Assembly: GCA_965240325.2 (NCBI GenBank)
Contig: OZ251246.1
Span: 124,001-188,000 of the forward strand
Origin: Rebecca billardiae RCC1528
Lineage: Eukaryota; Protista; Haptophyta
Length of the DNA stretch: 64,000 bases
Direction: 5' to 3'
Shown: positions 856 through 64,000 of the stretch, one piece after another
Layout of the letters: each line of letters opens with the position of its first letter
Numbering within the stretch: the first letter of the stretch is position 1
Made by a program: the position numbers and the translations under genes
The notes under the pieces: model-generated
Told to the model about the DNA's origin: nothing
Database searches by the model: none
The model's input: only the letters and a program-made list of their open reading frames with translations

Positions 856-901
<46 letters not shown>

Positions 902-3765: not shown

Positions 3766-3800
<35 letters not shown>

Positions 3801-4587: not shown

Positions 4588-4652
<65 letters not shown>

Positions 4653-12874: not shown

Positions 12875-12974
12875 CGCTTGCGCCGCTCGCGCCGCTTGCG
12901 CCGCCCCCGCCGCGCTCCCTCCCCGCCTCGGCCCCGGCCCGGCGCGCTGCTGCGGCAGCAGCAGCGCGGCGCGC

Positions 12975-14275: not shown

Positions 14276-14446
14276 CGCTTGCGGCGGCGCGCGTGGATCG
14301 ACGCCCGCGATGGATGCCGCACCCGCAGCCGAAAGCCTTGAGGAGCAGTCGGGACTCGGGACTCGGGAGCGTCTCTCCCGGACTTCCTCGCACCGTCTTG
14401 CACGCGGTGACAGCCTCAGTGGTCCTGACGACGACGAACCGTGAGA

Positions 14447-16690: not shown

Positions 16691-16740
<50 letters not shown>

Positions 16741-23611: not shown

Positions 23612-23800
23612 CTACTCGGGCTCGATGCGCGGCGTGCGGTGCAGCAGGAGCGGCAGCCCGAGCAGCGAGACGACGAGCGGCTCGAGCACGGCCAGCAGGC
23701 ACAGCAGGCTCAGCAGCCTGCGCGTGGCGGCGGCGAGTGCGCGCGCGGCGCTGGGCGGTCAGCGCGGCCGCGCGCGCGCGCGCGCGCGGCCGCTCGGCGC

Positions 23801-23839
<39 letters not shown>

Positions 23840-26800
23840 CGCGCACCAGCTGGCGCAGACGTACGCGGCGCCGCCGGAGGACATGGCGCGGCTCGAGCCC
23901 GCGCGCACGCCGATCGCGCCGAGCAGGCAGCCGAGCAGCAGCAGGCCGGCCACGGCCCACGCCGGCCCCTCGGCCACCAGCCTGAACCGCCAGCGCGCGG
24001 AGAAGGAGGGGGCGAGCGCGGACGCGCCGGCGCGCGCGCTGGTGGTGCGGCGCTGCTGCTCCTTGTCGAAGACGTCGGGGCTGGCCGCGGCGCCCGCGTC
24101 GAAGAAGAGCACGCCGCCCTCGCGCCCGCCGGACTGCGCCGAGCGGCGCGACGAGTCGGACGCCGCCTCCGCGCCCGGCACCGACTCGGCGCCCGCTTCG
24201 TCCTCCGCCTCCTCCCCCTCCGGCGTGCCCTCGGGCCCGAGGTAGCGGCGCAGCGCGTCCGCCTTGCTGCGCGGCTTGGCGCCGGCGGCCTGCTCGGGCG
24301 TCTGCTGCGGCAGCGCCGAGAACTGCGCGGCCGCGCGCGAGGGCGCGGTGCGCGGCGTGAGCGCGGCGTCGCGCGCGGGCGGCGCGCGCGCGGCGCGCGG
24401 CGCGCGTCGCGCGCGGCTCGCGCGCACCCCTGGCGACGCGCCCGGCGGCTCGGGCGGCGGGCGGTGCCTGACGGCGGTCGCGGCGGTGGCGTACGCGGCG
24501 GGGTCGGTGATGAGCAGCCGCGTCGTGTCGCAGCCGCACGCCGTGCCCGTGCCCGACGAGCGCCGCCTGACGAGCTGAGCGCCAGCGCCGCCGTCCGCGG
24601 CGGCGGGCGCGCCCACGCCGCCGGGCACAAACTGACCGCGGCGCGCCGCGCCGGCGTATCCGCCGGCCGGGCGCTCGCGCGAGGTGGAGCGTCGGATGTT
24701 GCGCTCGCCGAGCGCGCCGCCCGCGCCGCCGAGCTCGGCGCCGAGCATGCTCTCGCGCGCGGGCACGCGCGACGCGCTGAGCCGCGCGGCGCGCACACCC
24801 ACGCCGATTGGCCGTGGGCTGCCCACGCCCACGCCGCCCACGCCGCCGCCGCTGCTGCCGCGCGCGCCGCGCGCCGGCAGGCCGGCCAGCCCGACTCGCT
24901 GCGACTGGAAGTCGGAGAGCGCGGCGGTGGAGGCGTAGACGGGCTCGCCGTCGCGCGTGGGCGAGAGCGGCGAGGAGCCGTCGGGCAGGAGGTACGACGC
25001 GAGGCCCGAGCCGCCCGCGCCCGGCGTGTAGGGCCGGCCGCGCGCGCCGGGCGAACTGCTAGCGGGCGCGCCCGCGGCGGCGGCGGCGGCGGCGGCGGCC
25101 GACTCGCGAGCGGCGGCGTTGGAGGCGCGCTGGCCCGCGGGCGGCGAGCGCGTGGGGATGGGCACCCACGAGCCGGAGCCGCTGCCGCCGGCGGCGGCGA
25201 GGGCGAGCGCGCGCGCGCGCCGCCCCGCCACGCCGCCCGCGGCCGCGCCGCCCGCGGCCGCGCCGCCGTCCGCCGCCGGCGCGGCGGCCGCGCCGAGCAG
25301 CGAGGCCGCGTTGGCGTTGAGGGCGGCCGCGCGCGAGCGGCGGCGGCTGCCGGGCGGAGGGCCGATGGCGGCGGCGGCGCTGCCGCGGCGGCGGTCGGAG
25401 GCCGCGCACGCCGCGGGCGCCGCCTCCGCCGCCGCGCCGGCGGCGGCGGCGGCGGGCGCGCCGTCGAGAGGCGTGGGCGGGTGCGGCGGCAGCGGCGTCG
25501 CGTCAACGGCGACGCGGCAGCCGCGCGTGCCGGCCCACGCGCGCACGGTGGCGGAGCCGGGGCGCGAGATGACGCTGGCCGCGGCGGAGGAGGACGAGGC
25601 GGCGTCGTCGCCGCCCGCGCCCGCCCCGCCTCCACACCCGCCGCTCGCCACGAGCGTGCCCGCGCCCGCCGTCGCCGAGGCGGGCGGCTGCACTTTCTCG
25701 CGGAAGCCCGCGCGCGCCCCCGCGCCTGCGCCGCCCGCCGCGGCCGCGGACGCGCGCCGGCCGAGGCCGGGGCCGGGCGCGGGGCCGGGGGCGCCGCCGA
25801 GCGCGGCGGCGGGCGGGAGGATCGCCCCGCCGCCGCCGAGCAGCGGGATCGCCACGCGGCCCGCGCCGCCGCCCGGCGGCTGCGGCGCGAGCGCGCGTCC
25901 GCCCTCGGCGGCGCCCAGCCACACGCCCGGCGGCGGCGCGATGATGCGGCCGCCGTCGGCGGCGGCGGCGCGCGGCGGCATCGCCGGGAGCATCGGCGGC
26001 CCGCCGCCGCCCGCGCCGGGCGGCAGCTGCGCGCGCCGCTGGAAGGCGGGCGCTGGCACGGCGTCGCCGTCGGCGCCCGCGCGCGCGGCGAGTCGGCGCG
26101 ACGGCGGCGGCGCCTCCGCCTCCGCCTCCGCCTCGGGCCGCGGCGGCTGTGGCGGCGGTGGGCGCGGGGGCTGCGGCGCGGGGCCGGGCTCGGCCGCCGC
26201 CTCGCCCCACGCGCCCCCGCCCGCGCGGCGCCCGGCCGACGGCGGCCCCGCGTCCGCGAACGCCGCGTCGCCGTCGTCGTCGCCGCCGGGCGGCGGCGTC
26301 GGCTCGGGCGGCGCGGGCGCCGGGTCGGGCGGCGGCCGCTCGTCCGGCGGGCGCGGCGGCGGAGCGGCGCCCGCCGAGTCGTCCGCGTCGGGTGGCGGTG
26401 TGCGCGAGCGGCGCGGCTCGCGCGGCTCGAGCGCGCGCAGCCCGGGCGGCGGCGGCGGGCGGCGCGTCGGGCTGGCCGCGCTCGCGCAGCCCGCGGCGGC
26501 GGACGCCGCGGCCGCGCCGCCGCCCTGCTCGGCCGACGCGCGGCGCGTGAGCGTGGGCGCGGCGGCGCCGCCGTCGGCGACGGAGCTGGTCGCGGACTCG
26601 CGCGCGGGGCGCGAGCGGACCGAGTCGGTGCGCTGCAGCGGCGGGATCCCCGCCGCGCCCGCGATCGCCGGCGTGGCGAACAGGTCGACCGGCGTGGCGT
26701 CGTGGATGACCGTGCGCTTGGGCGGCGAGCGCGGCGGCCGCGCGCGCGCGCCGGTCGACGAGCGGCGCGAGACGGCGCTCATGCCGCCCTGCGAGTCGAC

Positions 26801-28455
26801 GCGGCGCACGCCGGGCGAGGCGGGGCGGGCGGTGGGCGAGGCGGCGGGCGCGCCCGCCGCCGTCGCGGGCAGCAGCCCCGCGCCCGCCGTCGCGGGCAGC
26901 AGGCCGACGCGCTCGCGGCGCGGGCCGCCGCGGCCGCGGCCGCCGCCGAGCGGCGGCGGCGCGGCGGCGGGCGCGGCCGCGCCGCCGCCCCTGCCGACGG
27001 CCGAGCCGTCGCGGCTGGCGAGGCGGCGCGGCGGCGCGCGCGCGGGCGGCGGCGGGATCGCCACGCCCTCGAACAGCTTCGCGCCACTGCCGCCCACGCC
27101 GAGCGAGCCGTCGCCGAAGCCGATCGCGCCGAGCCTTGGCGCGGGCGGCGCGCTCGGGCCGGCGCCCGCGCCGCCGCCGCCGTCTTGCGAGCGGCCCGCC
27201 GGGCTGCACGCGGCGGCAAAGTCGCGGCGGCCGGCGCGCGCGGCGGCGGGCGCGCCCGCCGCGGGCTTGCGCGAGTCCAGCCGCGGCGGCGCGGGCGGCA
27301 GCGAGGTGGGTAGCACCGGCGCGCCCGCCGCGGCCGCGCCGCCGCCGGCGCCGCCGCCCGGCGCGGACGCCGTCTCGACCGGCAGCGACACGCGGCCTGT
27401 CTTCTGCAGCGACGTGGGGTCGACGGGCGTGAGCTTGGGCTTGCAGCGCGACTTGGGCTCGAGGCGCGTCTTCACGCGCAGCCGCGTCTCGAACGGCAGC
27501 TCGGCGAACCGGTCGTCCGAGCAGTACGCCATCGGCGGCGCGGGCAGGTCCTGCGCGGCCGCGGTCGCCACACCCATCTCCTCGCCAAAGATCTGCGACT
27601 GGTCGCGCGCGGGCGACTCGAACGGGGCGGCGGGCGGCGGCGGGCGGAGGGGCGCGGGCACGACGCGGCGCGGCGCGCGCCCGCCCAGCGGGCCGAGCGC
27701 GTCGCCCAGGTCCGCGTCGTCCACCACGCCCTCCTCGCCCGCGCCGCCGCTCGCGCGCGCCGCGCCGAGCGCGCCGAGCGGCGGCACGGCGCCCGGGCGC
27801 GCGCCGCCGCGCGGGCCGGCCGTCGGCGGCGGCAGCAGCGAGACGCCCACCTCGCGCTTGGGCGGCGCGGGCGGCGCGACGACGGGGCGGAGGATGAGCG
27901 AGCGGTCCGACTGCGCGACCGAGAGCGCGCCGCCCTCCGACGACAGCGACGCGCCGTGCGGCGACGAGCCCGCCGCGTCGGCGACGCGCAGCCGCGGGCG
28001 CGACGCGCGCCGGAACGACGCGAGCCGCGCGCGCGCGCCCAGCTCGGCGTCGCGCCGGCGCGCGCGCGCGTAGTAGAGGAAGGGCGCGCGCGCGAGCCAG
28101 CACAGCGGCGCGGCGCACAGCGCGCCGAAGAGCCCGACGAGCAGCACGCCGAGCGCCGACCCCGTCGCCTCGCCCTCGGCGGGCGCGAGCGCGGACGGCG
28201 CGAGCGCGGCGCTCGCCGCGTCGGCCGAGCCGCTGAGGCCCTCGTCGAGCGCGACCGCCGCGAGGAAGGCGGCGGCGGCGCACGCGCCGAGGACGGGGAC
28301 GGACTCGAGCCGCCCGACCGAGCCGTCCGTCGTGCGGCGCAGCTCGGCCGGCGCCCGCGCCCGCGTCGCGTTCGCGAGCGCGTGCGTCTGCGCGAAGAAG
28401 GCGCTGAAGCGCGCCCAGCGCGTGGGCGGCTGCAAGAGCTGGCGCCAATCAGCGG

Positions 28456-28492
<37 letters not shown>

Positions 28493-30911
28493 GGCCGCGC
28501 GCTCGGCGCGCGGCGGGGTGAGCTCGGCGTCGTCGGCGGTGGAGACCGAGGCGCGCGCCACGCCGCCGTCCTCCGCCGACGCGCGGCGCGGCGAGACCGG
28601 CGGCGAGCGCGAGGGCGGGCTGGGCGGCGGGCTCGGCGCACCGCCGTCGCCGCCACCGCCTGGCGGCGCGCCGCCGCCGCCCTCCTGCCCCTGCCCCTGC
28701 CCCTGCCCCTGCTGCTCCTGCTGCGCGTGCGCCGCCTTGAGCGCGGCGCCGTGCGACTGGCGGTCGACCCAGAGCAGCGCGAGCACGTCGAGCAGCAGGA
28801 TCGAGAACGCGACGAAGCCGAGCACGAAGCCGCCCCAGTGCGGCTCGGGCGGCGCGAGCGTGACCGCCGTCGACGGCACCGACTCGACCGCGCCCGGCGG
28901 CGGCGGCGCGGGCGCGGGCGGCGCCACGCCGAGCCGCAGCTCGGGGTAGACGACGGCGGCGCCGGGGAGCGCGAGGCGCTCGGCCGCGGAGAGACTGTCG
29001 AGCAGCGCGCGCACCTCCGCCTCCGACACCGACCCGCCGCCGCCCGCCTGCGCCTCGAGCTGCGCGCGCGCCGAGAGCCGCACGTCTCGGGCGAACGCAA
29101 AGCACAGGGCGAGTGTGGCCGGCGGCAGCTGGCCCGGCGCGGGCTCGGTCGGGGTGAAGGTGGCGGAGCCGTTGGTCAGCGCGAGCGGCGGCGCGGCGGC
29201 GGTGGCCGCCGCGTCGGCGCACGCCGCCGTCGCGTTGCTCGAGTTCGACACGCTGAACGCCGCCACGTCGAACATCGCCGTGCCGTCAAAGACGCCCGCC
29301 TCCGCGCCCACGCCCGGCCCTCGGAAGAGCAGCGCAATGGGCGCGCCGTCGAGCGCGACGACGGACGCGCCGGCGTCGTCGAGCGCGGAGGCGTCGGCCG
29401 CGGTGGCGCCGGCGCGCGCGGGCGCGCCGCCCTCGGGCACCACCTCCTCCACCGAGCTCACCAGCCGCAGCGGCGGCGGCGGGCTCGGCGGGCTCGGCGG
29501 GCTCGGCGGCGGGCTCGGCGGCGGCGGCGCGGGCGGCGATCGCGGCGCGTCGTCAAACTCTGGGACGGGCGTGGGCACGACGACGGCGGCGGCGGTGGCG
29601 GCGAAGACGGCGGGCGAGAGCGCGGTGGAGTTGAGCGCGGCCTCCACGCTCAGCGCGCTGCCCACCAGCTGGCGCACCGCGCCCACCATCGACTCGGACA
29701 CGACGCGCTGCGAGGCGCCCAGCAGGCGGATCTGCTCGGTCACGTCCGTCACGGCCGCGCTGCCGATCGTCGCGGCGCGCGCCTGCAGCTGGGTGACGGC
29801 GGAGGCGGTGGAGCGCGAGACGGCCTCGAGCACGGCGGACGAGGCGTTGGACACCTGCGCCGAGCTCGCCACCGCGCCGAAGCGCAGCCCCGCGCGCAGC
29901 GCCACGCGCAGCTGGTTGGGCCACAGCCGCAGGTCGAAGAGGGTCGAGGACGCGCCGCCGCCGCCGCCGCCGGGCGGCGGCGGCGGCGAGGCGGGCGGCG
30001 GCGAGGGCGAGGTGTCGGCGGCGCTGACGTTGAGCACGCCCGAGGCGAGCAGCTCCTCCGCGATCGCCGCCTGCACGCGCTCCGCCGCGCTCACCAGCAC
30101 CGACGTCGGCGCGCCCGACGCCACGATCGTCGCGGCGATCACCTCAGTGGTCGCCTGCAGCGAGGCCATCAGCCCGAGCAGCGCGGCCGCCTCCGCCTTC
30201 ACCGCCTCCTGCCGCCACACGGAGGAGTACGGGTCGGCGGTGAGGAGCGCGGCCGCGGCGCCGCCCGCGCCGAACGCCGCCGGGTCGAGCCCCAGCGCCG
30301 CCGCCACGTCCGAGTCGAGCACGTGCGTCGAGCGGCCCAGGTCGACGAGCAGCGTACTGAGTGGCGTCACGAGCACCGCCGCTTGCGAGGCGGCGGTGAG
30401 GCGCGTGCGCAGCGGCGTCGAGACGGTCGCGCCCGAGCCCGCGTCGACGCACGCGGAGAGCAGCGGGTCGATGCGCACGAGCGTGCCACGCACGCTCTCC
30501 CACTCCGCGACGAACCCAAAGTTGCCGAAGCCCGCCGTCACCGTCGACGCCTCGCCCGCGTCGAGCGCGCCGTCGCCGTCCGCGTCCAGCCAGATGGTGC
30601 AGCCCTCGAGGTAGCCGTCCATCGCCTTGCCGACGATCTCGGGCGTGGGCGGCGGGGAGGGCGGCGGCGAGGGGGGCGGCGAGGGCGGGGGCGCGGGCGG
30701 CGGCGAGGGCGGCGGGGACGGCGGCGGCGAGGGCGGCGGCGAGGGCGGCGCCGACGGCGGCGCCGACGGCGGCGGCGAGGGCGGCGGCGAGGGCGGGAGC
30801 GGCGGCGGGAACGGATCGGTGCGCGGCGGCGGCGGCGGGCTCGGCGGCGGGCTCGGCGGCAGTGACGGGATGGGCGGCAGCGCGGGCGGCGGTAGGGGCG
30901 GCGGCTGCGGG

Positions 30912-30942
<31 letters not shown>

Positions 30943-33900
30943 AGGGCGGCGGCGAGGGCGGCGAGGGCGGCGGGAACGGCTCGGTGCGCGGCGGCGGCGG
31001 CGGCGTGGGCGGCGGCAGCGGCGGCGGCGCGGGCGGCGGCGAGGGCGGCGGCGAGGGCGGCGGCGCGGGCGGCTGGAGCGTCGGCGGCGGGCTCGGTGGC
31101 GGCGAGGGCGGAGGGCTGGGCGGCGGCGAGGGCGGCGGCGAGGGCGGCGGCGAGGGCGGCGGCTGCGGCGGCGGCGATGGCGGCGACGCGGGCGGCGGCG
31201 GCGGCGGGAACGGAACCGTGCGCGGCGGCGGCGGCGGCGCGGGCGGCGGCGCGGGCGGCGGCGAGGGCGGCGGCGCGGGCAGCGGCGCGGGCGGCGGCGA
31301 GGGCGGCGGCGAGGGCGGCGGCGCGGGCGAGGGCAGCGGCGGTGGCGAGGGCGGCGGCGCGGGCGGCGCAGCCGGCGGCGGCGAGGGCGGCGGCGAGGGC
31401 GGCGAGGGCGGCGGGAACGGCTCGGTGCGCGGCGGCGGCGGTGGCGCAGGCGGCGGGCTCGGCGGCGGCTGCGGAGGCGGCCGCGGCAGCGGCGAGGGCG
31501 GCGGCGAGGGCGGCGGCGAAGGGGGCGGGCTCGGCGGCGGCGAGGGCGGAGGCGGCGCCGGCGGCGAGGGCGGCGGCGGGCTGGGCGGCGGCGAGGGCGG
31601 CGAGGGCGGCGGGAACGGCGTCGTGCGCGGCGGCGGCGGCGGCGTCGGCGGCGGGCTCGGCGGCGGCGACGGCGGCGGGCTCGGAGGCGGCGCGGGCGGC
31701 GGCGCCGGCGGCGGCGAGGGCGGCGCGCTCGGCGGCGGCGCCGGCGGCGGCGAGGGCGGCGGCCCCGGCGGAGGCGGCGAGGGCGGCGGCGAGGGCGGCG
31801 AGGGCGGCGGGAACGGCGTCGTGCGCGGCGGCGGCGGCGGCGTCGGCGGCGGACGCGGCGGCGGCGAGGGCGGCGGGCTCGGCGGCGGCGAGGGCGGCGG
31901 CGCGGGCGGCGGCGAGGGCGGCGCGCTCGGCGGCGGCGCGGGCGGCGGGCTCGGCGGCGGGGAGGGCGGCGGTGGCGAGGGCGGCGGCGAGGGCGGCGAG
32001 GGCGGCGGGAACGGCGTCGTGCGCGGCGGCGGCGGCGGCGTCGGCGGCGGACTCGGCGGCGGCGTTGGCGGCGGGCTGGGCGGCGGCGCGGGCGGCAGCG
32101 CGGGCGGCGGCGTTGGCGGCGGCGAGGGCGGCGGCGCGGGCGGCGGGCTCGGCGGCGGGCTCGCCGGCGGGCTCGGCGGCGGGCTCGGCGGCGGCGGCGT
32201 GGGCGGGAGTGGCGGCGGCGGCGAGGGCGGCGGCGAGGGCGGCGACGGCGGCGGGAACGGCTCGGTGCGCGGCGGCGGCGGCGGCGCCGGCGGCGGGCTC
32301 GGCGGCGGCGACGGCGGCGGGCTCGGCGGCGGCGCCGGCGGCGGCGCGGGCGGCGGCGCGCCGGGCGGCTGCGCCGGCGGCTGCGCCGGCGGCTGCGCCG
32401 GCGGCGCGCCGGGCGGTGGGCTCGGCGGCGGCGACGGCGGCGGCGACGGCGGTGGGCTCGGCGGCGGGGAGGGCGGCGGCGCAGGCGGCGACGGCGGCGG
32501 GAACGGCTCGGTGCGCGGCGGCGGCGGCCGGCTCGGCGGCGGCGCGGGCGGCGGCGACGGCGGCGGCGACGGCGGCGGCGCGGGCGGCGGGCTTGGCGGC
32601 GGCGGCGCGGGCGGCGGCGCGGGCGGCGGCGCGGGCGGCAGCGACGGCGGCACGCCCGGCGGCGCGCTCGGCGGCGGGCTCGGCGGCGGCGCGGGCGGCA
32701 GCGACGGCGGCGGCCGCGGCGGCGGCGACGGCGGCGGGCTCGGCGGCGAGGGCGGCGGGAACGGCTCGGCGCGCGGCGGCGGCGGCGGCGCGGGCGGCGG
32801 CGAGGGCGGCGGCGAGGGCGGCGGCGGTGAGGGCGGCGGTGTCGGCGGCAGCGGCGCGGGCGGCGGCGCGGGCGGCGGCGCGGGCGGCGGGCTCGGCGGC
32901 GGGCTCGGCGGCGGCGAGGGCGGCGGCGCCGCCACCAGCGGCGGTGGGCTCGGCGGCGGCGCGGGCGGCGGGCTCGGCGGCGGGCTCGGCGGCGGGCTCG
33001 GCGGCGGCGCGGGCGGCGGGCTCGGCGGCGGCGCGGGCGGCGCGGGCGGCGGGAACGGATCGGTGCGCGGCGGCGGCGGCGGGCTCGGCGGCGGGCTCGG
33101 CGGCGCGCTCGGCGGCGGCGAGGGCGGCGGGCTCGGCGGCGGCGCGGGCGGCGGCGGCGAGGGCGGCGGCGCGGGCGGCGGCGCGGGCGGCGGCGCGGGC
33201 GGCGGGCTGGGCGGCGGCAGCGGCGACGGCGGCGGCGGGCGTGGCGGCGGGCTGGGCGGCGGGCGCGGCGGCGGCGAGGGCGGCGGCACGGGCGGCGGCG
33301 GGCTCGGCGGCGGGCCCGGCGACGCGGGCGGCGGGCGTGGCGGCGGGCTCGGCGGCGCGCGCGGCGGCGGCGACGGCGGCGGCGCGGGCGGCGGCGGGCT
33401 GGGCGGCGGGCGCGGCTCCGCGGCGGGCGGCGGGCTGGGCGGCGGGCTGGGCGGCGGCGCGGGCGCGAGCTCGACGGTCGCGCTGACGAGCGGCACGAAC
33501 GCGAAGCCCGACGCGTCGTACGGCGCCGCGCTCGAGCCGAGGAACGGGAAGTTGCGGTCGGTCTCCGTGCCGCCGAGCGCGTCGGTCGTCTCGACCATGA
33601 ACGCGACGCGCACGGAGCCGGGCTCGGGCCAGCGGCCGTCGGACGTGTCCGGGCGGAAGGCGGCGGTGAAGGTGCCGTCGCCGGCGTGCGCGGCGGTGAG
33701 CACCCAGTTGCCCTCGCCCGAGTCCGAGCCCGCGCTGCCGCTCGACACCGCCACCTCGTACGCGCCGCCGCCGTACTCCACCTCCGCGCGCACGGCCGTC
33801 TTGTCCGCGCTCGCGGGCGCGGACGCGTCGTCCACGACGGTCACGGCGAGCACGAGGTCGGTGGAGGGCGCGGCGCCGCCGAGGGGCGAGGGGAGCAGCG

Positions 33901-37990: not shown

Positions 37991-38025
<35 letters not shown>

Positions 38026-56000: not shown

Positions 56001-59000
56001 GGGCTCGGTGGCGGGCTGGGTGGCGGGCTGGGTGGCGGGCTGGGCGGCGGGCTCGGTGGCAGGCTGGGCGGAGGGCTCGGCGGTGGCGACGGTAGCGGCG
56101 CGGGCGGCGCCGCAGGCGGAGGCGACGGCGGAGGCGAAGGCGGCGGCGACGGAGGCGGCAACGGCGTCTCCAGCGGTGGTGGCGGGCTCGGCGGAGGCGA
56201 CGGCGGCGGCGATGGCGGCGGCACAGGCGGCTGCGAGGGCGGCGGCGAAGGCGGTGGCGACGGTGGCGACAACGGCGGCGGTGGCGACGGTGGTGGCGAC
56301 GGCGGCGGCGAAGGCGGCGGGCTAGGTGGCGGCGCCGGCGGCGACGGAGGCGGGAACGGATCCGTGCGCGGCGGCGGCGGCGGCGCAGGTGGCGGGCTCG
56401 GCGGGGGCGAAGGCAGCGGGGACGGTGGCGGAGACGGTGGCGGAGCCGGAGGCGGCGGACTCGGCGGCGGAGACGGCGGCGGAGATGGCGGAGGGCTCGG
56501 CGGAGCCGACGGCGGCGGTGACGGCGGCGGCGCAGGCACAGCGACTGGCGGCGGCGGACTCGGTGGCGGGCTGGGTGGCGGGCTGGGCGGCGCACTCGGC
56601 GGCGGCGACGGTGGCGGCGCGGGCGGTGCCCCAGGCGGCGGCGAAGGCGGCGGTGCTGGTGGCGGTGACGGTGGTGGCAATGGCGTCGCAACCGGTGGCG
56701 GCGGGCTCGGCGGCGGCGATGGAGGCGGCGAGGGCGGTGGCGAGGGCGGTGGCGAAGGCGGGGCGCGTGGCGGCGGAGATGGCGGCGGCACCGGCGGCGG
56801 AGGAGAAGGCGGCGGCGACGGCGGTGGAGATGGCGGTGGGCTTGGCGGCGGCGACGGAGGCGACGGCGGCGGGAACGGCTCTGCACGTGGCGGTGGCGGC
56901 GGCTGCGGAGGCGGGCTAGGCGGCGGCGACGGCGGCGGGCTGGGCGGAGGAGACGGCGGCGGCGCTGGTGGTGGCGGGCTCGGCGGTGGCCGCGGCGGAG
57001 GGCTCGGTGGCACGCTCGGTGGCGGGCTTGGTGGCGGAGACGGCGGCGGGGCCGGTGCAGCCACTGGCGGCGGTGGGCTTGGCGGGGGACTCGGAGGCGG
57101 GCTCGGCGGTATAGACGGAGGCGGCGACGGTGGAGGTGCCGGCGGCGCCGCAGGTGGCGGCGACGGCGGCGGTGCTGGGGGAAGCGACGGTGGGGGCGAC
57201 GGCGGCGGCGCAGGCGAGCCCACCGGTGGCGGCGGGCTCGGCGGTGGCGATGGCGGCTGCGACGGTGGTGGCGAAGGCGGAGGGGCAGGCGGCGGGGACG
57301 GAGGCGGCGTGGGTCCCGGCGGCGGGGACGGTGGCGGGGTGGGCGGTGGGCTGGGCGGCGGAGCCGGGGCAGGGGGAGGCGATGGCGGCGGCGATGGCGG
57401 CGGCAGTGGCGGTGGCTGCGGCGGTGGCGAAGGGGGCGGCAGCGGAGGCAGCGGTGGCGGCGATGGAGGCGGCGATGGCGGTGGGGATGGTGGCGGCGAC
57501 GGCGGTGGCACAGGTGGCGGGGCGGGCGGCGCCGCCGGAGGCGGCGGACTCGGCGGTGGCGCCGGAGGCGGCGGCGACGGTGGCGGTAGCGGTGGCGGTG
57601 GCAGCGGAGGCCCAATCACCACTGTCGAGAGCAGCGGCGTGAACGTGTACAGGAAGTCGGCGTAGAACTGCGCGGAGGAGCCGAGGAACGGGAACTTGCG
57701 GTCGTCCGCGCCGTTGCCCAGCGCGTCCGTCGTCTCGATCATCACAGCAACGCCCAACGACCCGCTGAGCGCCTGCGGCCACCCGCCGCTCGGGTACACG
57801 CCCACGCTGAACACGCCGTTGGCGTACTCGCCGCGCCCCACCCAGTAGCCTTCGGTCGACGTGCCGTTGTCCGTGCCGTTCACGTACACTGGCGTGTATG
57901 ACGCAGTGGCCGCGCCGATCTCGAAGAAGACGCTCGTCTGGCTGTCGTCGGCGACGGTGTTGTCGTCCTTCGTCACGACGACGGACACCACGAGCGGGTC
58001 GCTCGTGCCGACGCCAACGGCCCCCGACGTGATGCTGTAGCTCGTCAGGAAGCGGTACTTGCCCGCGACTGCGCGCAGCAGGTACTGCACATCCTGCGCG
58101 CCCGTGCTGTTGTCCAGCGTCGGGTCGAGCGCGGACGCGCACGTCGTCAGCCCGGACACGCCGATGACGAACTGCGAGAGCACGCGCACGTCGAATGAGG
58201 TCAGGGCGCAGTCACCGTTCACATCGCCGGCGACGCCAGCCGAGCAGCCCGAGCACTCCGCCAGCCGCCGCGCGCGCGCCGCCCGGCTCGACTCGGTCGG
58301 CACAAACAGGGGCGGCACGTACTCAGCGGCCAGCGCGAGCGCGCGCCGCCGGCTGACGGTCGTCGTGAGGCCGCCTGCGCCCGCGAAGATGTCGGCGTTC
58401 TGCACGCGCGTCTCGGTCGCGCCCTGCACGGTCACGAGCTCGACGATGCTTCCCGTCAGCGACGTGCTCGCCGAGGACAGCACGTCGAATGTGACGGAGC
58501 CGATCGAGGCGGCAGTGCCGCTGGTGATCTGCGATGCCGTGTTGCCCACAAACCTGACCTCGTTCAGCGGATCGTTGATCGTGCACTCGGCCCACGAGAG
58601 CGTGCTGCACGACGTCGCGACCAGGACAGCGCTGTCGATGGCCAGCTCGATCTGGAAGTTGACCAGGTACTCCGAGCCGCCACCCGTGTTCACGCGCACG
58701 GGCACCGTCAGCGAGTTGCCAGACTGCTGGAACTGCAGTCCGCTCGCTGAGCCGAGGTCCACGTCGTACGTGCCAGGCTGCAGGTTCGCCGTCACGTCGA
58801 GGGCGTCGGCCACCGCGCCGGCATCGCGCGACGTCGCGGTGATCGAGTTCGCCGCGTCACGGCTGTTGCCGGCGATCGTCACCACGCCGTTCGGGTCGAC
58901 GCCGAGCACGGCCGCGTCGTCGCTCTCAAAGCTGAGCACCTCTGACACGCTCACGTACCCCAGCGACATCAGGTTGGTGTACTGCACGCCGTCCTCGAGC

Positions 59001-62000
59001 GTGACGAGCGCGCTCAGCGTGCTCGACGTGCCGTTGGTGGCCAGCAGCGACGCGCCGGACGTCAAGCCGCCCAGGCCCAGCGTCAGCGCCGTCACCTTCA
59101 CCGCCGTCGCGTCGACGTAGACGGTGGCTGACGCTGTGAGCGTGCCCCACGTCGCGTTGATGAGCGCAACGCCCGCGCCCAGGCCGATGACAGTGCTGCC
59201 CGACGTGGTCGCGACGAGCGTGTTGTTCGACGCCAGCACCACCTCTGCGGCCAGCAGCGTGGGCGAGATCACCGTGCCGTCGCTTAGCGTGGCCGATGGC
59301 GTCGTGGCCGTGCGCTGGAACGTGGTGGACGCGCCGATCAGCCCGAGCGTGTCGTCGTCGAGCGTGATCTCGAATGACGCGCCAGCAGCCGTCACGACCG
59401 GCACCTCGACGAAGCCACTGAGGAGGTACGAGTCGACGAAGACGGTCACGTTGAGCGCAGTGCACGTTGCACCGCTCGCCATCGTCACCTCGTTCACGCC
59501 GTCGAATGTGGCGCACGACGACGGCACCGAGAGCGTGATGTTGGTGCGCGGGTCGGTGGTGAAGTCCACCTGCGACTCGTCTTCAAACGTGACCGTGATC
59601 GTGACGGTGAGCGACGTGGGCAGCGACGTCGGCGGCTCGGCAGCAGGGTCGCCCGGCACGGTCACCTTGGCGGCCGATGTGCTCACGCCCACGCTCACCG
59701 CGTTCGGCAACTCTAGATCCACGCGCGCGCGGCCCGTCGCGAGCACGGCGCTGCACGAATCGATCCAGCTCGCGTCGAGGAGCAGGCCCTCCTGCGACGT
59801 GGCAAACGTTGCCACGGTAGCCGTCCACGGCGACGATGCGTCGCCCGGCGCACCGACGGTGAGACTCGACGTGCGGCTCGTCAGCGTGACCTCAGTCGAC
59901 GGCACGAGCTCGTACGAGCCGTCGCCGAGGTACGCGTACGTGTACACGCTCACCGTCTGCCCTTCGGCCGTGAGCGTCTGCCCGAGAGCAGCCGACGCGT
60001 CGAAGCCGCTCGTCGCGCCCACACTCAGCGTCGACGGCGGCGAGTCGATGAACGCGATCGAGTTGAACGCCACGGGCCGGAGCGATGCGATGAGGCGCTC
60101 CACGTCCGTCGACACCACGATCGTCGACGAGATCGACGGGCTCGAGCCAGATGCGCTGATCGCAGCCGAGCCAACGCCAACGCCCGTCACCATCACCACG
60201 CCGGTCGTGCCGGACGTGGAGATGCTCGCGACGCCGGCGTCGCCCGAGGCGAGCGTCGCGTCGCGCGTCACGTCCACGTTGCTCACCGTGCTCAGACCCG
60301 TGCCGCCAAACGACGCGACGAGGCTGGCCGTCGTCGACTGGAACGCCTGCGTGCCGCACTGGCCGGGCTGCGACGCGCCCTTGATGGCGAAGAGCGTACC
60401 GTACCCGAAGCGGATCTCTGCGGACAGCGGGTGCCACACGCACAGCGGCACGCTCGCGACCACCGCGCCGCTCGAGACGCGCGTCACGTTCACAAGAGTC
60501 GTCGCGGCGCCCGACGTGCTCGAGCTGCTCGCCACCACCGTGCACGGCGACCCTGAGCTGATGCCGAGCACGCTCGAGTCGAGCGCGAGGCACGAGTAGC
60601 CGCTCGACTGAGTGGCAGACGCAGTGGCGGCGCGGCTGTACAGCTCGAGCACGCTGAGCGCGGTGGTCACGTCGGTGCCGGAGAGCGGCGCGGTGTTGAC
60701 CAGCTCGCCCGAGGCGACGTATGCGAGCCAGCCCTGCACCACCACGGTCTCGACCACGAGCGTGCCGCTCGCTGACGCGCCGTCGTCCGCGTCGGCGACC
60801 ACGCCCGCCTGCTCGCTCACGTACACCTGCGTCGCGTCGTTCACGTACTGCTCGATCTCGACCGAGATGGCGCCGGCGTAGCTGCCAGCGGAGGCACCAC
60901 CGGCCACGCTCATCGCCAGCGTGATCAGCTCCACGGCCGTACCGGTCACCTGCGCGTTGGTCGTGCCACCGGTGAGCCCCGTCGCGATGATCGACACGAG
61001 GCCGGCCGCGTTGTCGTTCACCTCCGGTGAGTTGTACGTGCTCGCGACCGACGTGCTGGCGACGCTGAGCACGCTCGAGTTGTACGCAATGTTGATCTGC
61101 CAGGTGATCAGCGCGACGCCACCCGTGTGCGCATACATCACCAGGTCAAAGCTGTCGCCCGCGAACACGGGCGACTGCGCCATCTGGCCCAGCAGGCCGA
61201 CCGATGGGAGTGTGTACGCGGTCGGGCTCTCGGCGAGCGTGATCGCGCCCGCACGAGAGCACGAGTCGACTGTGCCGCCGCCGTAGTTGAAGTCGACGAG
61301 CACGTCGACGCTGCCCGCTGCGGCCGTGCTGAACCAGCCCGAGCTCACGGTGGCCGAGCACTCGCCCACGCCCGTCGTCGCGCTCGGCGAGCCGCACGAG
61401 AAGCTCTGGTCGGAGCCGCCCACCAGCGACAGCGTCAGGCTCACGCTCAGACCCGTGGTGAGCACGGACGAGCGGTGCGCCGCATCGCGAAGCTGGTACG
61501 CGACGCGCACGCCCGTGCGGTCTGCGTACGCCGTCGGCGTGCGCACCGCGCAGTCCACGCTCGCCGCCTGCTCGGCGGTCACGCTGTAGCTGCTCGCCAC
61601 GCCGAGATCGATGCCGTGCGACGCGGCGCGCACCGTGCCGGACGCGCCCACAGACGCCCCCGCCAAGAAGCCCACCGTCAAGTTGTGCCGGTTGCCGGCG
61701 CTGCTGACCGTGCCGTGCACAGCCGCGCCCGGGCTGCTGCTCGTCGTGTACAGCGTGATCTGAGCGTCCGAGACCAGCGCGTCCGCGCCGAACACGAACG
61801 GCGGAAGCGGCGGCGACGGCGGCGACGGCGGCGGGAATGGCAGCGTGCGCGGCGGCGGCGGGCTTGGCGGCGACGGCGGCGGGAACGGCGGCGGCGGGCT
61901 AGGCGGCGGCGATGGCGGTGGGCTCGGCGGCGGCAAGGGCGGCGAGCGCGGCTGCGGGGGCGGCGGAGACGGCGGCGGCGAAGGTGGAGGCGACGGCGGA

Positions 62001-64000
62001 GGGCTCGGTGGCGGTTTTGGCCCGGGCACTGGTGGTGGCGGGCTGGGCGGCGGGCTGGGCGGCGGGCTGGGCGGAGGCGATGGCGGTGGTCGCGGGAGAG
62101 GTGGAGGTGGCGAAGGTGGCGGCTCCGGCGGGGGACTAGGAGGCAACGCGGGTGGAGGGCTGGGCGGTGGTGACGGCGGCGGAGACGGCGGCGGCGTCGG
62201 AGGCGGCGGGCTCGGCGGCGGCGACGGCGGCGGGGACGGCGGCGGGCTCGGCGGTGGAACCGGCGGCGGCGACGGCGGCGGTGTAGGCACAGCAGCCGGC
62301 GGCGGCGGGCTCGGTGGTGGACTGGGAGGCGGGCTCGGAGGCGGGCTGGGCGGCGGCGACGGTGGCGGCGACGGCGGAAGCGCAGGCGGCGGCGAAGGTG
62401 GCGGCGACGGCGGAGGCGACGGAGGCGGCAACGGCGTCTCCAGCGGTGGCGGAGGGCTCGGCGGGGGCGACGGCGGCGGCGATGGCGGCGGCACAGGCGG
62501 CGGCGAGGGCGGCGGGCTCGGCGGAGGCGACGGTGGCGGCAACGGCGGCGGAGGCGATGGCGGCGGCGACGGCGGAGGCGAGGGCGGCGGGCTAGGTGGC
62601 GGCGCCGGAGGTGACGGAGGCGGGAGCGGATCCGTGCGCGGCGGCGGCGGCGGCTGTGGTGGCGGGCTCGGCGGCGGAGATGGCGGTGGGGACGGAGGCG
62701 GGGACGGTGGCGGCGTCGGAGGCGGCGGGCTCGGCGGTGGACGCGGTGGCGGTGAAGGCGGCGGGCTCGGCGGTGGCGACGGCGGCGGCGACGGCGGCGG
62801 TGTGGGCACAGCAGCCGGCGGCGGCGGGCTCGGCGGTGGGCTTGGCGGCGGACTTGGTGGCGGGCTGGGCGGCGGCGACGGTGGCGGCGCGGGCGGCGCC
62901 CCAGGCGTTGGCGAAGGTGGCGGCGACGGCGGAGGCGACGGAGGCGGCAACGGCGTCTCCAGCGGTGGCGGAGGGCTCGGCGGGGGCGACGGCGGCGGCG
63001 ATGGCGGCGGCAAAGGCGGCGGCGAGGGCGGCGGGCTCGGCGGAGGCGACGGTGGCGGCAGTGGCGGCGGCGGCGACGGCGGCGGCGACGGCGGAGGGGA
63101 AGGCGGCGGGCTAGGTGGCGGTGCCGGCGGCGACGGAGGCGGGAACGGATCCGTGCGCGGCGGCGGCGGCGGCTGTGGTGGCGGGCTCGGCGGCGGAGAC
63201 GGCGGCGGGGACGGAGGCGGGGACGGTGGCGGCGCCGGAGGCGGCGGACTCGGCGGTGGACGCGGTGGCGGTGAAGGCGGCGGGCTCGGCGGTGGCGACG
63301 GCGGCGGCGACGGCGGCGGTGTTGGCACAGCAGCCGGCGGCGGCGGGCTCGGCGGTGGGCTTGGCGGCGGGCTTGGTGGCGGGCTGGGCGGCGGCGACGG
63401 TGGCGGCGCGGGCGGCGCCTCAGGCGGCGGCGAAGGTGGCGGCGACGGCGGAGGCGACGGAGGCGGCAACGGCGTCTCCAGCGGTGGCGGAGGGCTCGGC
63501 GGGGGCGAAGGCGGCGGCGATGGCGGCAGCAAAGGCGGCGGCGAGGGCGGCGGGCTCGGCGGCGGAGACGGTGGCGGCACCGGCGGCGGCGGTGACGGCG
63601 GCGGCGACGGCGGAGGCGAAGGCGGCGGCGAAGGCGGCGGCGCCGGCGGCGACGGAGGCGGGAACGGATCCGTGCGAGGCGGCGGCGGCGGCTGTGGTGG
63701 CGGGCTCGGCGGCGGAGATGGCGGCGGGGACGGCGGCGGGGACGGTGGCGGCGTTGGAGGCGGCGGGCTCGGCGGCGGACGCGGTGGCGGTGAAGGCGGC
63801 GGGCTCGGCGGTGGCGACGGCGGCGGCGACGGCGGCGGTGTAGGCACAGCAGCCGGCGGCGGCGGGCTCGGTGGTGGGCTGGGCGGCGGGCTTGGTGGCG
63901 GGCTGGGCGGCGGCGACGGTGGCGGCGCGGGCGGCGCCTCAGGCGGCGGCGAAGGTGGCGGCGACGGCGGAGGCGACGGAGGCGGCAACGGCGTCTCAAG
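23612..64000 (-). CDS. Giant (>13,400 aa) membrane-anchored surface protein: SPPP rods, three TMEM132-like/cohesin/dockerin modules, SdrD-B-like domain, polycystin-1-like 5-TM C-terminus; 5' end beyond the window
   Basis: Uninterrupted 40-kb ORF, open to position 64000. A terminal GT-AG intron at 23846-23718 gives CASW|LLSLLCLLAVLEPLVVSLLGLPLLLHRTPRIEPE-TAG (23614-23612). A second in-frame 105-nt intron at 24427-24323 is likely. Hydrophobic helices at ~28765-28840, ~28250-28305, ~28075-28160, ~23915-23965 and ~23645-23717. Confidence 0.88.
33465..37990 (-). other. Globular module 3 (membrane-proximal, diverged) of the giant protein
   Basis: Same motif order as modules 1 and 2 (YADRADV..YQLRD, ECS..V.PSWF, YAHTGG, VPLRVWYP, DVDLG, LVNFQIE, CTINDP, YGDVSGDCAFTSFD, LDPTLDG, FPFLGSSA) but clearly divergent in sequence. 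Confidence 0.85.
39451..41850. repeat. Five tandem 480-bp coding repeats (160-aa Pro-rich unit)
   Basis: Anchor gctccgtgcgcggcggagg recurs at 39451, 39931, 40411, 40891, 41371 and 41851. Confidence 0.92.
44636..48823 (-). repeat. Globular module 2 of the giant protein (near-identical copy of module 1)
   Basis: Matches 57611-61798 at offset 12,975, with about 22 amino-acid differences counted by eye over ~1,396 aa. Confidence 0.95.
50155..56880. repeat. Higher-order coding array of 507/519-bp units (1,026-bp dimer period)
   Basis: The RTEPF anchor recurs near 50155, 50662, 51181, 51688, 52207, 52714, 53233, 53740, 54259, 54778, 55297 and 55804. Confidence 0.85.
57611..61798 (-). repeat. Globular module 1 of the giant protein
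   Basis: FVFGADALVSDAQ...FTPLLSTVVIGP, duplicated at 44636-48823. Confidence 0.95.

What the first reader, a model, noticed from the sequence alone, without database searches (positions are those of the whole stretch)
23612..64000. Giant algal surface polyprotein with repeated cohesin-dockerin modules on polyproline rods: candidate eukaryotic self-assembling scaffold
Seen: one ORF of >13,400 codons built as rod-module-rod-module-rod-module-rod-anchor. Each module has two cohesin-like beta domains (GDSFDLVMYAHTGGVALITWQINIAYNSSVL; GNSLTVPVRVNTGG..LVNFQIELAIDSAVL) and a duplicated Ca-loop/helix motif of dockerin type (GDVNGDCALTSFDVRVL...LDPTLDNSTGAQDVQYLLRAVAG). Established: cohesin-dockerin pairs are the high-affinity, mechanically strong connectors of bacterial cellulosomes, and bacterial-type pairs are not a characterised feature of algal surfaces. 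Inference: carrying both partners in every module would let molecules or their cleaved pieces lock together into chains or a mesh tethered to the membrane (cell coat, hair or scale anchor, adhesion structure). I recognised no catalytic domains, so the role would be structural rather than degradative.
Basis: partly seen in the sequence, partly recalled or inferred. Interest (0 to 1): 0.95.

Follow-up and report, generated by a model that had tools for sequence, protein, structure and literature searches.

The report
Giant algal fibre with cohesin-dockerin beads
A haptophyte-type alga encodes, in one uninterrupted reading frame of more than 13,400 codons, a membrane-anchored thread of micrometre-long polyproline rods carrying three beads, each an animal TMEM132-like adhesion ectodomain fused to a true cohesin and a true calcium-loop dockerin; the parts are real, but whether they plug into each other is untested.

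Summary
Window 23759-63988 (minus strand) is one open frame of 13,409 codons that runs off the window end. Its layout is rod, module, rod, module, rod, module, rod, membrane anchor, long tail. Third-position GC stays at 0.95-1.0 up to the stop, so I see no intron.

Each ~1,390-aa module holds these parts:
- a TMEM132-type ectodomain, including a first cohesin;
- extra Ig domains;
- a second cohesin (Z 11-13 to solved cohesins);
- a linker with dibasic sites;
- a dockerin (family profile E 8e-6 to C. thermocellum dockerins, both Ca loops conserved);
- an unassigned beta-sandwich.

The module is a conserved unit in more than 600 proteins. The named ones come from haptophytes, Cymbomonas and Mesostigma. 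The Diacronema lutheri orthologue, from an independent assembly, has the same plan as one open frame of at least 11,486 codons. Its public gene model splices the rods out.

The self-assembly idea is not tested. Fixed cohesin-dockerin adjacency (148 of 152 dockerins) and a compact AlphaFold2 model (pTM 0.89) favour pairing within the module over an open mesh. No RNA run was listed.

First readers of this scan also noted similar genes on other pieces of this genome; nobody has checked those notes.

The parts
23759..63988 (-). Giant open reading frame, 13,409 codons plus stop at 23759-23761. It is open at the window edge, so the N-terminus lies beyond 64000.
   Evidence: GC3 profile
61790..63988 (-). 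Rod 1 (at least 733 aa, truncated by the window): Ser-Pro-Pro-Pro tetrads, 71% Pro
57629..61789 (-). Module 1 (ORF aa 734-2120)
59702..61774 (-). TMEM132-type ectodomain of module 1: conserved region, cohesin 1 and three Ig/BIG domains
   Evidence: AlphaFold2 model pLDDT 92. The top 13 AFDB Swiss-Prot hits are all TMEM132 proteins, E about 1e-32 over model residues ~5-695.
60752..61219 (-). Cohesin 1 of module 1
   Evidence: Family HMM. hhalign against the cohesin 2 profile gives 97.5%, E 5e-12.
60407..60721 (-). Ig domain matching Pfam Ig_TMEM132_4th
   Evidence: 36.7 bits against a cut-off of 27
58349..58774 (-). Cohesin 2 of module 1
   Evidence: VIA-align Z 11-13.2, rmsd 2.5-3.0 A over ~125 residues to solved cohesins; Foldseek
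58256..58348 (-). Linker with RRR directly after cohesin 2 and RRL directly before the dockerin cysteines; candidate processing sites
58046..58255 (-). Dockerin of module 1: two Ca-loop/helix repeats (GDVNGDCALTSFD..., LDPTLDNSTGAQD...)
57629..58060 (-). Conserved C-terminal beta-sandwich joined to the dockerin without a linker (KYRFL junction); fold family unassigned
48833..57628 (-). Rod 2, 2,932 aa (about 0.9 um as a polyproline II helix)
44654..48832 (-). Module 2, 98% identical to module 1. Cohesin 1 at 47777-48244, cohesin 2 at 45374-45799, dockerin at 45071-45280, beta-sandwich at 44654-45085.
38024..44653 (-). Rod 3, 2,210 aa; holds a 480-nt higher-order repeat at 39393-42642
33437..38023 (-). 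Module 3, 40% identical to module 1. Cohesin 1 at 36911-37387, cohesin 2 at 34313-34738, dockerin at 33911-34138, beta-sandwich at 33485-33925.
30644..33436 (-). Rod 4, 931 aa
28838..30643 (-). Juxtamembrane region, 602 aa. Its first ~200 aa are conserved in Diacronema. Six of its eight Asn lie in N-glycosylation sequons.
28760..28837 (-). First and strongest hydrophobic segment (aa 11718-11743), the predicted membrane span
23762..28759 (-). 1,666-aa low-complexity tail with three more hydrophobic segments (28244-28309, 28091-28168, 23897-23968)

Best explanation
This is a real, apparently intron-less gene of a pavlovophyte-like haptophyte. It encodes a giant, membrane-anchored, fibrous surface glycoprotein.

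Shown here:
- Four Ser-Pro3 rods hold 6,806 aa inside the window, about 2.1 um if they form polyproline II helices.
- The rods space three ~1,390-aa beads.
- A juxtamembrane region, a membrane span and a ~1,650-aa tail follow.
- Each bead is a TMEM132-type adhesion ectodomain (conserved region, cohesin 1, Ig/BIG domains), then further Ig domains, then a fixed cassette: cohesin 2, basic linker, dockerin, beta-sandwich.

Inferred:
- The rods are hydroxylated and glycosylated spacers that hold the beads far from the cell.
- In the Ca-rich exterior the dockerin is folded and docks onto the cohesin 2 next to it, making a compact Ca-dependent joint.
- The joint could keep the chain together even if a subtilisin-type protease cuts at the conserved dibasic sites flanking the linker. 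That would resemble the non-covalently held halves of SEA or GAIN domains.
- Cohesin 1, the TMEM132 part, stays free for contacts with other molecules.

The domain and body-plan part I hold at about 0.9. The pairing-within-the-module mechanism I hold at about 0.4.
For: Frame and gene:
- GC3 is 0.95-1.0 to the stop.
- The module has 676 homologues, 156 below 1e-30, many covering all 1,200 query residues.

Orthologue: the Diacronema lutheri locus L001 is one open frame of at least 11,486 codons with the plan rod / module A / rod / module B / rod / tail. Window modules 1 and 2 pair with its module A, and module 3 pairs with its module B, with support 100/98 and 100/100.

TMEM132 part:
- Pfam Ig_TMEM132_4th scores above its curated cut-off.
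- The top 13 AFDB Swiss-Prot matches are TMEM132A-E and the worm homologue, E about 1e-32.

Cohesins:
- Cohesin 2 gives Z 11-13.2 to solved cohesins, and 26 of the top 27 entries are cohesins.
- Pfam Cohesin matches 8 of 34 family members, best E 1.3e-7.
- The cohesin 1 and cohesin 2 profiles match at 97.5%, with negative controls below 1.5%.

Dockerin:
- The family profile hits C. thermocellum type I dockerins at E 8e-6 to 2e-4.
- Loop positions 1, 5 and 12 are invariant or nearly so in 34 members.
- Protein-language-model neighbours are bacterial Cohesin+Dockerin_1 clusters.

Pairing within the module:
- 148 of 152 dockerins in about 170 family proteins sit less than 200 aa after a cohesin, and 125 are followed by the beta-sandwich.
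- The AlphaFold2 model of cohesin 2, linker, dockerin and sandwich has pLDDT 88.7 and pTM 0.89 even though residues 160-174 of the linker are disordered.

Processing:
- RR(R) follows cohesin 2 in about 29 of 34 members, and RR(x)L precedes the dockerin in about 24 of 34, around a variable spacer.
- 3 of the 4 dibasic positions in module 1 lie in that 46-aa linker.

Topology:
- Hydrophobic segments.
- Sequons are enriched only before the first span, 6 against 1.1 +/- 1.0 in shuffles.
- Family members with a signal peptide, modules and a C-terminal membrane span exist, for example P0091 and P0015.
Against: - No binding, cleavage, hydroxylation, localisation or transcript data exist. No RNA run was listed, and the one run found holds only 30-212-base fragments.
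- I could not see the model's coordinates or its error map. Contact between cohesin 2 and the dockerin is inferred from pTM alone. It could be made through the beta-sandwich and not through the canonical cohesin face.
- AFDB and ESM Atlas searches found no second model with the same three-domain packing (TM by query at most 0.36).
- In bacterial scaffoldins a cohesin and a dockerin on one chain usually do not bind each other.
- The first basic motif lies in a predicted helix of fairly high confidence, which may make it a poor protease site.
- The second Ca loop has Thr, not Asp or Asn, at position 3.
- The window's own modules score below the Pfam cut-offs for Cohesin and Dockerin_1.
Confidence: 0.5

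Rival explanations
1. Assembly between molecules. Dockerins bind cohesins of other modules or other molecules: cohesin 1, or the cohesins of the many paralogues in this genome. Whole molecules or cleaved pieces would then lock into chains or a mesh tethered to the membrane, as a coat, hair or scale-holding layer.
For: - Each module has two cohesins but only one dockerin, so one cohesin is always unpaired.
- First readers noted many related genes on other pieces of this genome; these notes are unchecked.
- Dockerin loop positions 10-11, which set specificity in bacteria (my own knowledge), vary across the family.
- 5 of the 22 amino-acid differences between modules 1 and 2 lie in the dockerin.
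- The named genomes that carry the family are scale-bearing flagellates: Prymnesium, Diacronema, Cymbomonas, Mesostigma. That they bear scales is my own knowledge.
Against: - Cohesin 2 and the dockerin are almost never separated in evolution (148 of 152).
- AlphaFold2 predicts them as one compact body.
- Three of the five dockerin differences are adjacent and all five are conservative, so the clustering is weak.
- There is no interaction data.
Confidence: 0.25
2. The cohesin-fold and dockerin-fold domains do not bind each other at all. They are stable beta-sandwich and Ca-binding building blocks, or they bind other ligands such as glycans, scale material or partner receptors. This would match animal TMEM132, which has a cohesin with no known dockerin. 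The protein would be a long adhesion or sensing tether.
For: - Animal TMEM132 keeps the cohesin although no dockerin is detectable in vertebrates (PMC6030884).
- The window's domains are very distant from the bacterial ones, at 10-18% identity.
- The conserved third helix of the dockerin runs straight into the beta-sandwich, so part of its surface may serve only that packing.
Against: - Both Ca loops are kept under strong constraint in all 34 members.
- A cohesin immediately upstream is a near-invariant partner.
- The compact predicted unit.
Confidence: 0.2
3. Artefact. The frame would be open only because the DNA is 80-85% GC, or the repeat-rich region is mis-assembled, or the rods are introns as the public Diacronema gene model implies.
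For: - Other frames also hold ORFs of 1,000-3,000 aa.
- Modules 1 and 2 are 98.9% identical in DNA.
- The NCBI model of the orthologue removes about 10 kb as introns.
- No transcript was seen.
Against: - GC3 periodicity runs throughout and the rods keep the frame.
- The rods stay open and in frame in two species assembled independently.
- The two near-identical modules differ by 44 substitutions, half of them synonymous, and their flanking rods are only about 85% identical, so they are two distinct copies, not one copy assembled twice.
Confidence: 0.04

Closest known systems
Animal TMEM132 family (Sanchez-Pulido and Ponting 2018, PMC6030884)
   Same: Same ordered ectodomain: conserved region, cohesin, three Ig/BIG domains. 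Pfam Ig_TMEM132_4th scores above its cut-off. Fold match E about 1e-32 to all five human and mouse paralogues and the worm homologue. Type I membrane topology in family members.
   Different: Here the ectodomain is repeated three or more times on one chain. It is followed by extra Ig domains and a second cohesin, a dockerin and a beta-sandwich that animals lack. It is spaced by polyproline rods. The tail shows no similarity to TMEM132 C-termini. That paper dated the architecture to early holozoans; here it is in haptophytes and green algae.
Bacterial and archaeal cohesin-dockerin modules (cellulosomal scaffoldins and non-cellulosomal cohesin+dockerin proteins)
   Same: Cohesin jelly-roll fold. 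Dockerin with two duplicated Ca-loop/helix segments. Small bacterial proteins with Cohesin plus Dockerin_1 in tandem are the nearest language-model neighbours.
   Different: Eukaryotic and membrane-anchored. No enzymes or carbohydrate-binding modules. Conserved cysteines lie in and around the dockerin. The cohesin-dockerin order is fixed within one module. Binding is untested.
Chlamydomonas MST3/Mstax, the axial protein of the mastigoneme (PMC11015965)
   Same: Giant hydroxyproline-rich protein whose polyproline II helices span hundreds of nanometres. N-terminus distal, Ig-like extracellular domains, membrane domain, and a ~1,600-residue intracellular C-terminus. The window's tail is 1,666 aa.
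   Different: No sequence or Pfam sign of a PKD2-like domain here. No cohesin, dockerin or TMEM132 part is reported for MST3. Different algal lineage. No sign of a coat protein like MST1.
Hydroxyproline-rich glycoprotein rods: extensins, volvocine agglutinins SAG1/SAD1, TLP-4 tetrapeptide glycofibrils (PMC11725842)
   Same: Long runs of Ser-Pro3 tetrads, period 12 nt. TLP-4 shows that a bare S/T-P-x-x tetrapeptide chain can be the core of a glycan-coated fibril.
   Different: Hydroxylation and glycosylation are unknown here. Rods of 900-2,900 residues are far longer than those of extensins or agglutinins (length comparison from my own knowledge).

Membership tests
Cohesin (Pfam PF00963) | Nine-stranded beta-sandwich of cohesin topology | tested here: met
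   For cohesin 2: Z 11-13.2, rmsd 2.5-3.0 A, about 125 of 135-150 target residues; 26 of the top 27 PDB entries are cohesins. Foldseek probability 1.00, TM by target 0.6-0.66.
Cohesin (Pfam PF00963) | Sequence match to the family model at the curated cut-off | tested here: inconclusive
   The window's best score is 19.9 bits against a cut-off of 24.1 (module 3, cohesin 1). 8 of 34 family members match at E <= 0.01, best 1.3e-7. Cohesin 1 and cohesin 2 profiles are homologous, 97.5%.
Cohesin (Pfam PF00963) | Binds a dockerin | not testable with these tools
   Needs a multimer prediction or recombinant proteins.
Dockerin type I (Pfam PF00404) | Two duplicated segments, each a 12-residue Ca loop followed by a helix | tested here: met
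   GDVNGDCALTSFDVRVL and LDPTLDNSTGAQDVQYL align at positions 1, 5, 12, 13 and 16 (sequence). AlphaFold2 helices 197-207 and 230-240 follow the loops, pLDDT above 90.
Dockerin type I (Pfam PF00404) | Oxygen-donor residues at loop positions 1, 3, 5, 9, 12 | tested here: met
   Loop 1: D 34/34, N/S/D/T, D 32/34, T/D/S, D 34/34. Loop 2: D/N 34/34, T/D/S/N, D/N 31/34, D/T/N mostly, D 34/34.
Dockerin type I (Pfam PF00404) | Sequence match to the family | tested here: inconclusive
   Window alone: 17.1 bits against a cut-off of 22.9; PDB E 0.71. Family profile: E 7.8e-6 to 1.9e-4 to eight solved type I dockerins. 7 of 34 members match Pfam, best 1.3e-5.
Dockerin type I (Pfam PF00404) | Ca-dependent folding and cohesin binding | not testable with these tools
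   Experiment needed.
TMEM132 family | Ordered ectodomain: conserved region, cohesin, three Ig/BIG domains | tested here: met
   Model residues ~5-695 align to residues ~40-800 of TMEM132A-E, E 1e-31 to 1e-32, in the top 13 rows. Pfam 4th, 5th and 6th domains appear in order in family members.
TMEM132 family | Pfam Ig_TMEM132_4th at the curated cut-off | tested here: met
   36.7 and 38.5 bits against 27 in modules 1 and 2; 20.7 bits in module 3.
TMEM132 family | Single ectodomain, one membrane span, cytoplasmic tail with PP1 and WIRS motifs | tested here: not met
   There are three ectodomains per chain, rods, and an added cohesin-dockerin cassette. No Pfam hit to a TMEM132 C-terminal domain. 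The short motifs were not searched. I therefore file it as TMEM132-like, not as a TMEM132 orthologue.
Cellulosome-type scaffoldin system | Cohesins on a scaffold recruit dockerin-bearing enzymes | tested here: not met
   No catalytic or carbohydrate-binding domain in the protein. The dockerin sits on the same chain as the cohesins.
Hydroxyproline-rich glycoproteins | Long Ser-Pro(n) repeats | tested here: met
   Pro3 runs make up roughly 70% of the proline runs, and Ser is the main separator.
Hydroxyproline-rich glycoproteins | Prolyl hydroxylation and O-glycosylation | not testable with these tools
   Needs biochemistry.
MST3-like, polycystin-anchored fibrous proteins | PKD2-like membrane domain | tested here: inconclusive
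   No Pfam, NCBIfam or PDB sequence match in the anchor region. Only three or four hydrophobic segments.

The most novel reading that the evidence does not exclude
A eukaryotic plug-and-socket fibre. Each module would be nicked at its dibasic sites in the secretory pathway. The >2-um thread would then be a chain of polyproline segments held end to end only by Ca-dependent cohesin-dockerin joints. Such a chain could assemble itself, exchange segments and be shed. The orphan cohesin of animal TMEM132 adhesion proteins would descend from this ancestral cassette, having lost its dockerin partner.
Probability: 0.2. Interest if true: 0.85.

Novelty: new variant of a known kind. Interest (0 to 1): 0.68.

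Why it matters
Cohesin-dockerin pairs are among the strongest known non-covalent protein connectors, and they have been characterised almost only in bacteria. Here both partners sit, under clear constraint, on the surface proteins of marine and freshwater algae, welded to the ectodomain that defines the animal TMEM132 adhesion family.

- For TMEM132: its cohesin has no known ligand, and the paper that defined the architecture dated it to early holozoans. This finding gives a concrete, testable candidate partner and shows the architecture in far more distant eukaryotes.
- For algal cell biology: it identifies a conserved family of micrometre-scale membrane-anchored fibres. In Diacronema lutheri, the public annotation breaks the orthologue up by treating the rods as introns.
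- For protein engineering: a disulfide-bearing eukaryotic dockerin and cohesin that fold in the secretory pathway could be useful parts.

Tried and rejected
- Transcript check. Two run searches gave no RNA run. The single run of unknown kind holds only seven fragments of 30-212 bases at depth 2-4. Nothing can be said about expression.
- Organism identity. The neighbouring ArsS-like gene gave at most 71% identity to an unnamed protein. The organism is placed only by the module tree, next to Diacronema.
- Word-indexed homologue search with the whole module. It returned only 2 proteins because of low-complexity words. The exhaustive HMMER search was the useful one.
- Anchor and tail. Pfam, NCBIfam, PDB sequence search and ESM Atlas features gave nothing usable. 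The polycystin-like anchor suggested by another first-reader note is neither supported nor excluded.
- An earlier local phmmer run of the tail against the collected homologues found nothing. BLASTP later showed 41% identity over 200 aa to the Diacronema protein. The first blank was therefore a false negative.
- The beta-sandwich after the dockerin is not related in sequence to the cohesins or to the Ig domain, and its fold family was not assigned.
- Independent support for the three-domain packing from AFDB clusters and the ESM Atlas: only the cohesin part matched.
- Clustering of module 1/2 differences in the dockerin: 5 of 22, but three are adjacent and all are conservative. I consider this too weak to use.
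- N-glycosylation sequons are not enriched in the modules, 11 against 10.1 expected.
- The CLIPPER-domain hit (9ifr) is an isopeptide-bond domain of bacterial adhesins and was not followed further.

Full report

The mechanical ORF list contains one frame on the minus strand, 23759..63988, of 13,409 codons. It is still open at the window edge. Translated in 200-residue bins, it shows four stretches of about 70% Pro and 15% Ser alternating with three globular blocks of about 1,390-1,530 residues. An Ala/Gly/Arg/Pro-rich tail of about 2,300 residues follows.

An open frame means little at 80-85% GC; the antisense strand of a rod holds a 3,009-codon ORF. I therefore looked for independent signs of coding:
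- Third-position GC is 0.95-1.0 in this frame through modules, rod 4 and the whole tail. It drops to 0.71 directly after the stop, with no intron-like dip. In rods 1-3 it is about 0.7, but those encode Ser-Pro3 in frame.
- Modules 1 and 2 differ by 44 substitutions, 22 synonymous and 22 non-synonymous codons.
- The module has hundreds of homologues.

**2. What the modules are**

Pfam on the window's own modules gives one match above its curated cut-off, Ig_TMEM132_4th (36.7 and 38.5 bits against 27). Cohesin (19.9 against 24.1) and Dockerin_1 (17.1 against 22.9) score below their cut-offs.

An exhaustive HMMER search with 1,200 residues of module 1 found 676 proteins at E <= 0.001 and 156 at E <= 1e-30. 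Many are aligned over the entire query. All the named ones are algal:
- haptophytes: Prymnesium parvum, Prymnesium polylepis, Diacronema lutheri, Pavlovales sp. CCMP2436;
- the prasinophyte Cymbomonas;
- the streptophyte alga Mesostigma.

*N-terminal half.* An AlphaFold2 model of the first 1,006 residues of module 1, built on 61 homologues, has pLDDT 92.0 and is all beta. Against AFDB Swiss-Prot its top 13 matches are TMEM132A-E of human, mouse, rat and fish and the C. elegans homologue. E is about 1e-32, and model residues ~5-695 align to almost the whole TMEM132 ectodomain. In family members the Pfam TMEM132 4th, 5th and 6th domains appear in order. The remaining ~300 residues are Big_2-like Ig domains.

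*C-terminal part.* A model of the last 386 residues (34 homologues) has pLDDT 88.7 and pTM 0.89.
- Residues 5-145 match solved cohesins with Z 11-13.2 and rmsd 2.5-3.0 A over about 125 residues. 26 of the top 27 PDB entries are cohesins (Foldseek).
- A profile of the family hits eight solved C. thermocellum and related type I dockerins at E 7.8e-6 to 1.9e-4, and cohesins at E 0.03.
- Pfam Cohesin and Dockerin_1 match 8 and 7 of the 34 members.
- Both 12-residue Ca loops keep their donor positions across the 34 members. Positions 1 and 12 of loop 1 and position 12 of loop 2 are invariant.
- The first cohesin (the TMEM132 one) and the second are homologous: hhalign gives 97.5%, E 5e-12, with negative controls below 1.5%.
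- Protein-language-model neighbours of the cassette are bacterial clusters carrying Cohesin plus Dockerin_1.

**3. The cassette and its linker**

I searched about 170 family proteins with HMMs of the five parts. Of 152 dockerins, 148 lie less than 200 residues after a cohesin, and 125 are followed at once by the same beta-sandwich. The order cohesin 1 ... cohesin 2, dockerin, sandwich is invariant, so each module has two cohesins and one dockerin.

The linker between cohesin 2 and the dockerin varies in length and sequence. It is bracketed by RR(R) directly after the cohesin (about 29 of 34 members) and RR(x)L directly before the dockerin's conserved cysteines (about 24 of 34). In module 1, three of only four dibasic positions in 1,387 residues lie in this 46-residue linker.

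That pattern is what processing by a kexin-, furin- or site-1-type subtilase would look like. This is inference only.

**4. Rods, anchor and topology**

The rods are dominated by Ser-Pro-Pro-Pro tetrads with a period of 12 nt. Their lengths are at least 733, 2,932, 2,210 and 931 residues. At 0.31 nm per residue for a polyproline II helix, that is about 2.1 um inside the window.

After rod 4 come, in order:
- a 602-residue region;
- a strong hydrophobic segment (aa 11718-11743);
- two weaker hydrophobic segments;
- a long low-complexity tail with a last hydrophobic segment 46 residues from the end.

Six of the eight Asn before the first span are in N-glycosylation sequons, against 1.1 +/- 1.0 in shuffles. 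The tail has one sequon. This fits an outside-to-inside orientation. Family members with a signal peptide, one to four modules and a C-terminal span exist.

The anchor has no Pfam, NCBIfam or PDB sequence match. The polycystin-like reading in another first-reader note remains open.

**5. An independent copy**

In a tree of the cassette, window modules 1 and 2 are sister to the first module of Diacronema lutheri KAG8459670, and module 3 is sister to its second module (support 100/98 and 100/100). The start of the juxtamembrane region is 41% identical to that protein (E 8e-33).

I fetched the Diacronema locus (GCA_019448385.1). The public gene model gives 4,660 aa over 24.5 kb. The DNA, however, is one open frame of at least 11,486 codons with 4,641 prolines. 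It is laid out as rod (at least 3,140 aa), module A, rod (2,860), module B, rod (580), tail (2,100).

The same body plan therefore exists in a second species and a second assembly, and the public model removed the rods as introns. This largely disposes of the assembly-artefact rival. The window's extra module is a recent duplication: 57000-63997 against 44025-50992 is 92.5% identical, and the modules themselves are 98.9% identical.

**6. How it most likely works**

Shown: a giant chain of rods and beads with a C-terminal membrane region. The beads combine a TMEM132-type ectodomain with a cohesin-dockerin cassette.

Inferred: the rods are glycosylated spacers, as in the Chlamydomonas mastigoneme protein MST3. 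In MST3, polyproline II helices span hundreds of nanometres, the N-terminus is distal, and a ~1,600-residue intracellular tail follows the membrane domain (PMC11015965). TLP-4 fibrils are another comparison: a bare tetrapeptide chain carries the glycan sheath (PMC11725842).

For the cassette I favour pairing inside the module, for two reasons. Cohesin 2 and the dockerin are practically never separated. And a three-domain model with a disordered linker still reaches pTM 0.89, which requires confident relative placement of all three domains. If the linker is cut, such a pair would keep the two halves together non-covalently and in a Ca-dependent way.

I could not inspect the coordinates, so the interface itself is unverified. 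No other predicted structure with the same packing was found.

**7. Comparison with what is known, and novelty**

The paper that defined the TMEM132 architecture states two things: cohesin domains in eukaryotes were known only from choanoflagellates, sponges and then animals, and no dockerin is detectable in vertebrates (PMC6030884).

Full-text searches found no paper that links cohesin or dockerin with haptophytes or algae in this sense, or TMEM132 with algae. Automatic UniProt names already flag the TMEM132 4th domain in Prymnesium and Cymbomonas proteins. The domain's presence in algae is therefore in databases, but I found it described in no paper.

I rate this a new variant of known kinds: every part is known, but the combination, its scale and its lineage are new.

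**8. Limits**

- No expression, processing, binding or localisation data.
- The N-terminus lies outside the window. Unchecked first-reader notes place another TMEM132-like part and another cohesin-dockerin pair 12.6-13.4 kb beyond it.
- Rod lengths depend on the assembly.

Noticed in passing
L001:2-34459 (Diacronema lutheri GCA_019448385.1, JAGTXO010000038.1): The public gene model KAG8459670 (4,660 aa over 24.5 kb) treats the polyproline rods as introns and starts inside cohesin 1. The DNA is one open frame of at least 11,486 codons. Giant rod-bearing genes of this family are probably mis-modelled in published haptophyte annotations.
   Followed up: yes
window 12860-15217 (-): Radical SAM plus DUF3641 protein. 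Its nearest named relatives are ArsS, the arsenosugar-biosynthesis radical SAM (seleno)protein, at 54-71% identity. Another first-reader note proposes an in-frame UGA-Sec here; I did not check that.
   Followed up: partly
window 39393-42642: Rod 3 holds a 480-nt higher-order repeat, 5.4-6.7 copies at 91-96% identity, on top of the 12-nt Ser-Pro3 period. This points to recent expansion of the rod.
   Followed up: no
window 38024-63988 versus 30644-33436: Codon use differs between rods. Rods 1-3 have GC3 of about 0.62-0.82, while rod 4, the modules and the tail have 0.90-1.0. The reason is unknown; it may reflect selection against perfect DNA repeats or a different age.
   Followed up: no
window 28838-30643 (-): The juxtamembrane region starts with GKAMDGYLEGCTIWLDADGDGALDAGE, a DxDxDG-type possible Ca site, followed by Ala-rich helices. 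Its first ~200 aa are conserved in Diacronema (41% identity). No family was assigned.
   Followed up: partly
window 1-6136: Another stretch of 80-86% GC. Frame 84-2960 (+) has GC3 0.96 and encodes an Ala/Ser/Pro/Gly-rich low-complexity product with no Pfam match. It may be part of a further gene that runs off the window start.
   Followed up: partly
window 15575-17179 (+): An ORF with a GHMP_kinases_C match (E 2e-5), presumably a sugar or mevalonate-type kinase gene with introns.
   Followed up: no
family-wide (P0001, P0002, P0012, P0020 and others): All named genomes that carry the module belong to flagellates covered with organic scales: Prymnesium, Diacronema and Pavlovales, Cymbomonas, Mesostigma. 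That they bear scales is my own knowledge. The pattern may only reflect sampling of the best hits, but a role in holding scales is worth a look.
   Followed up: no
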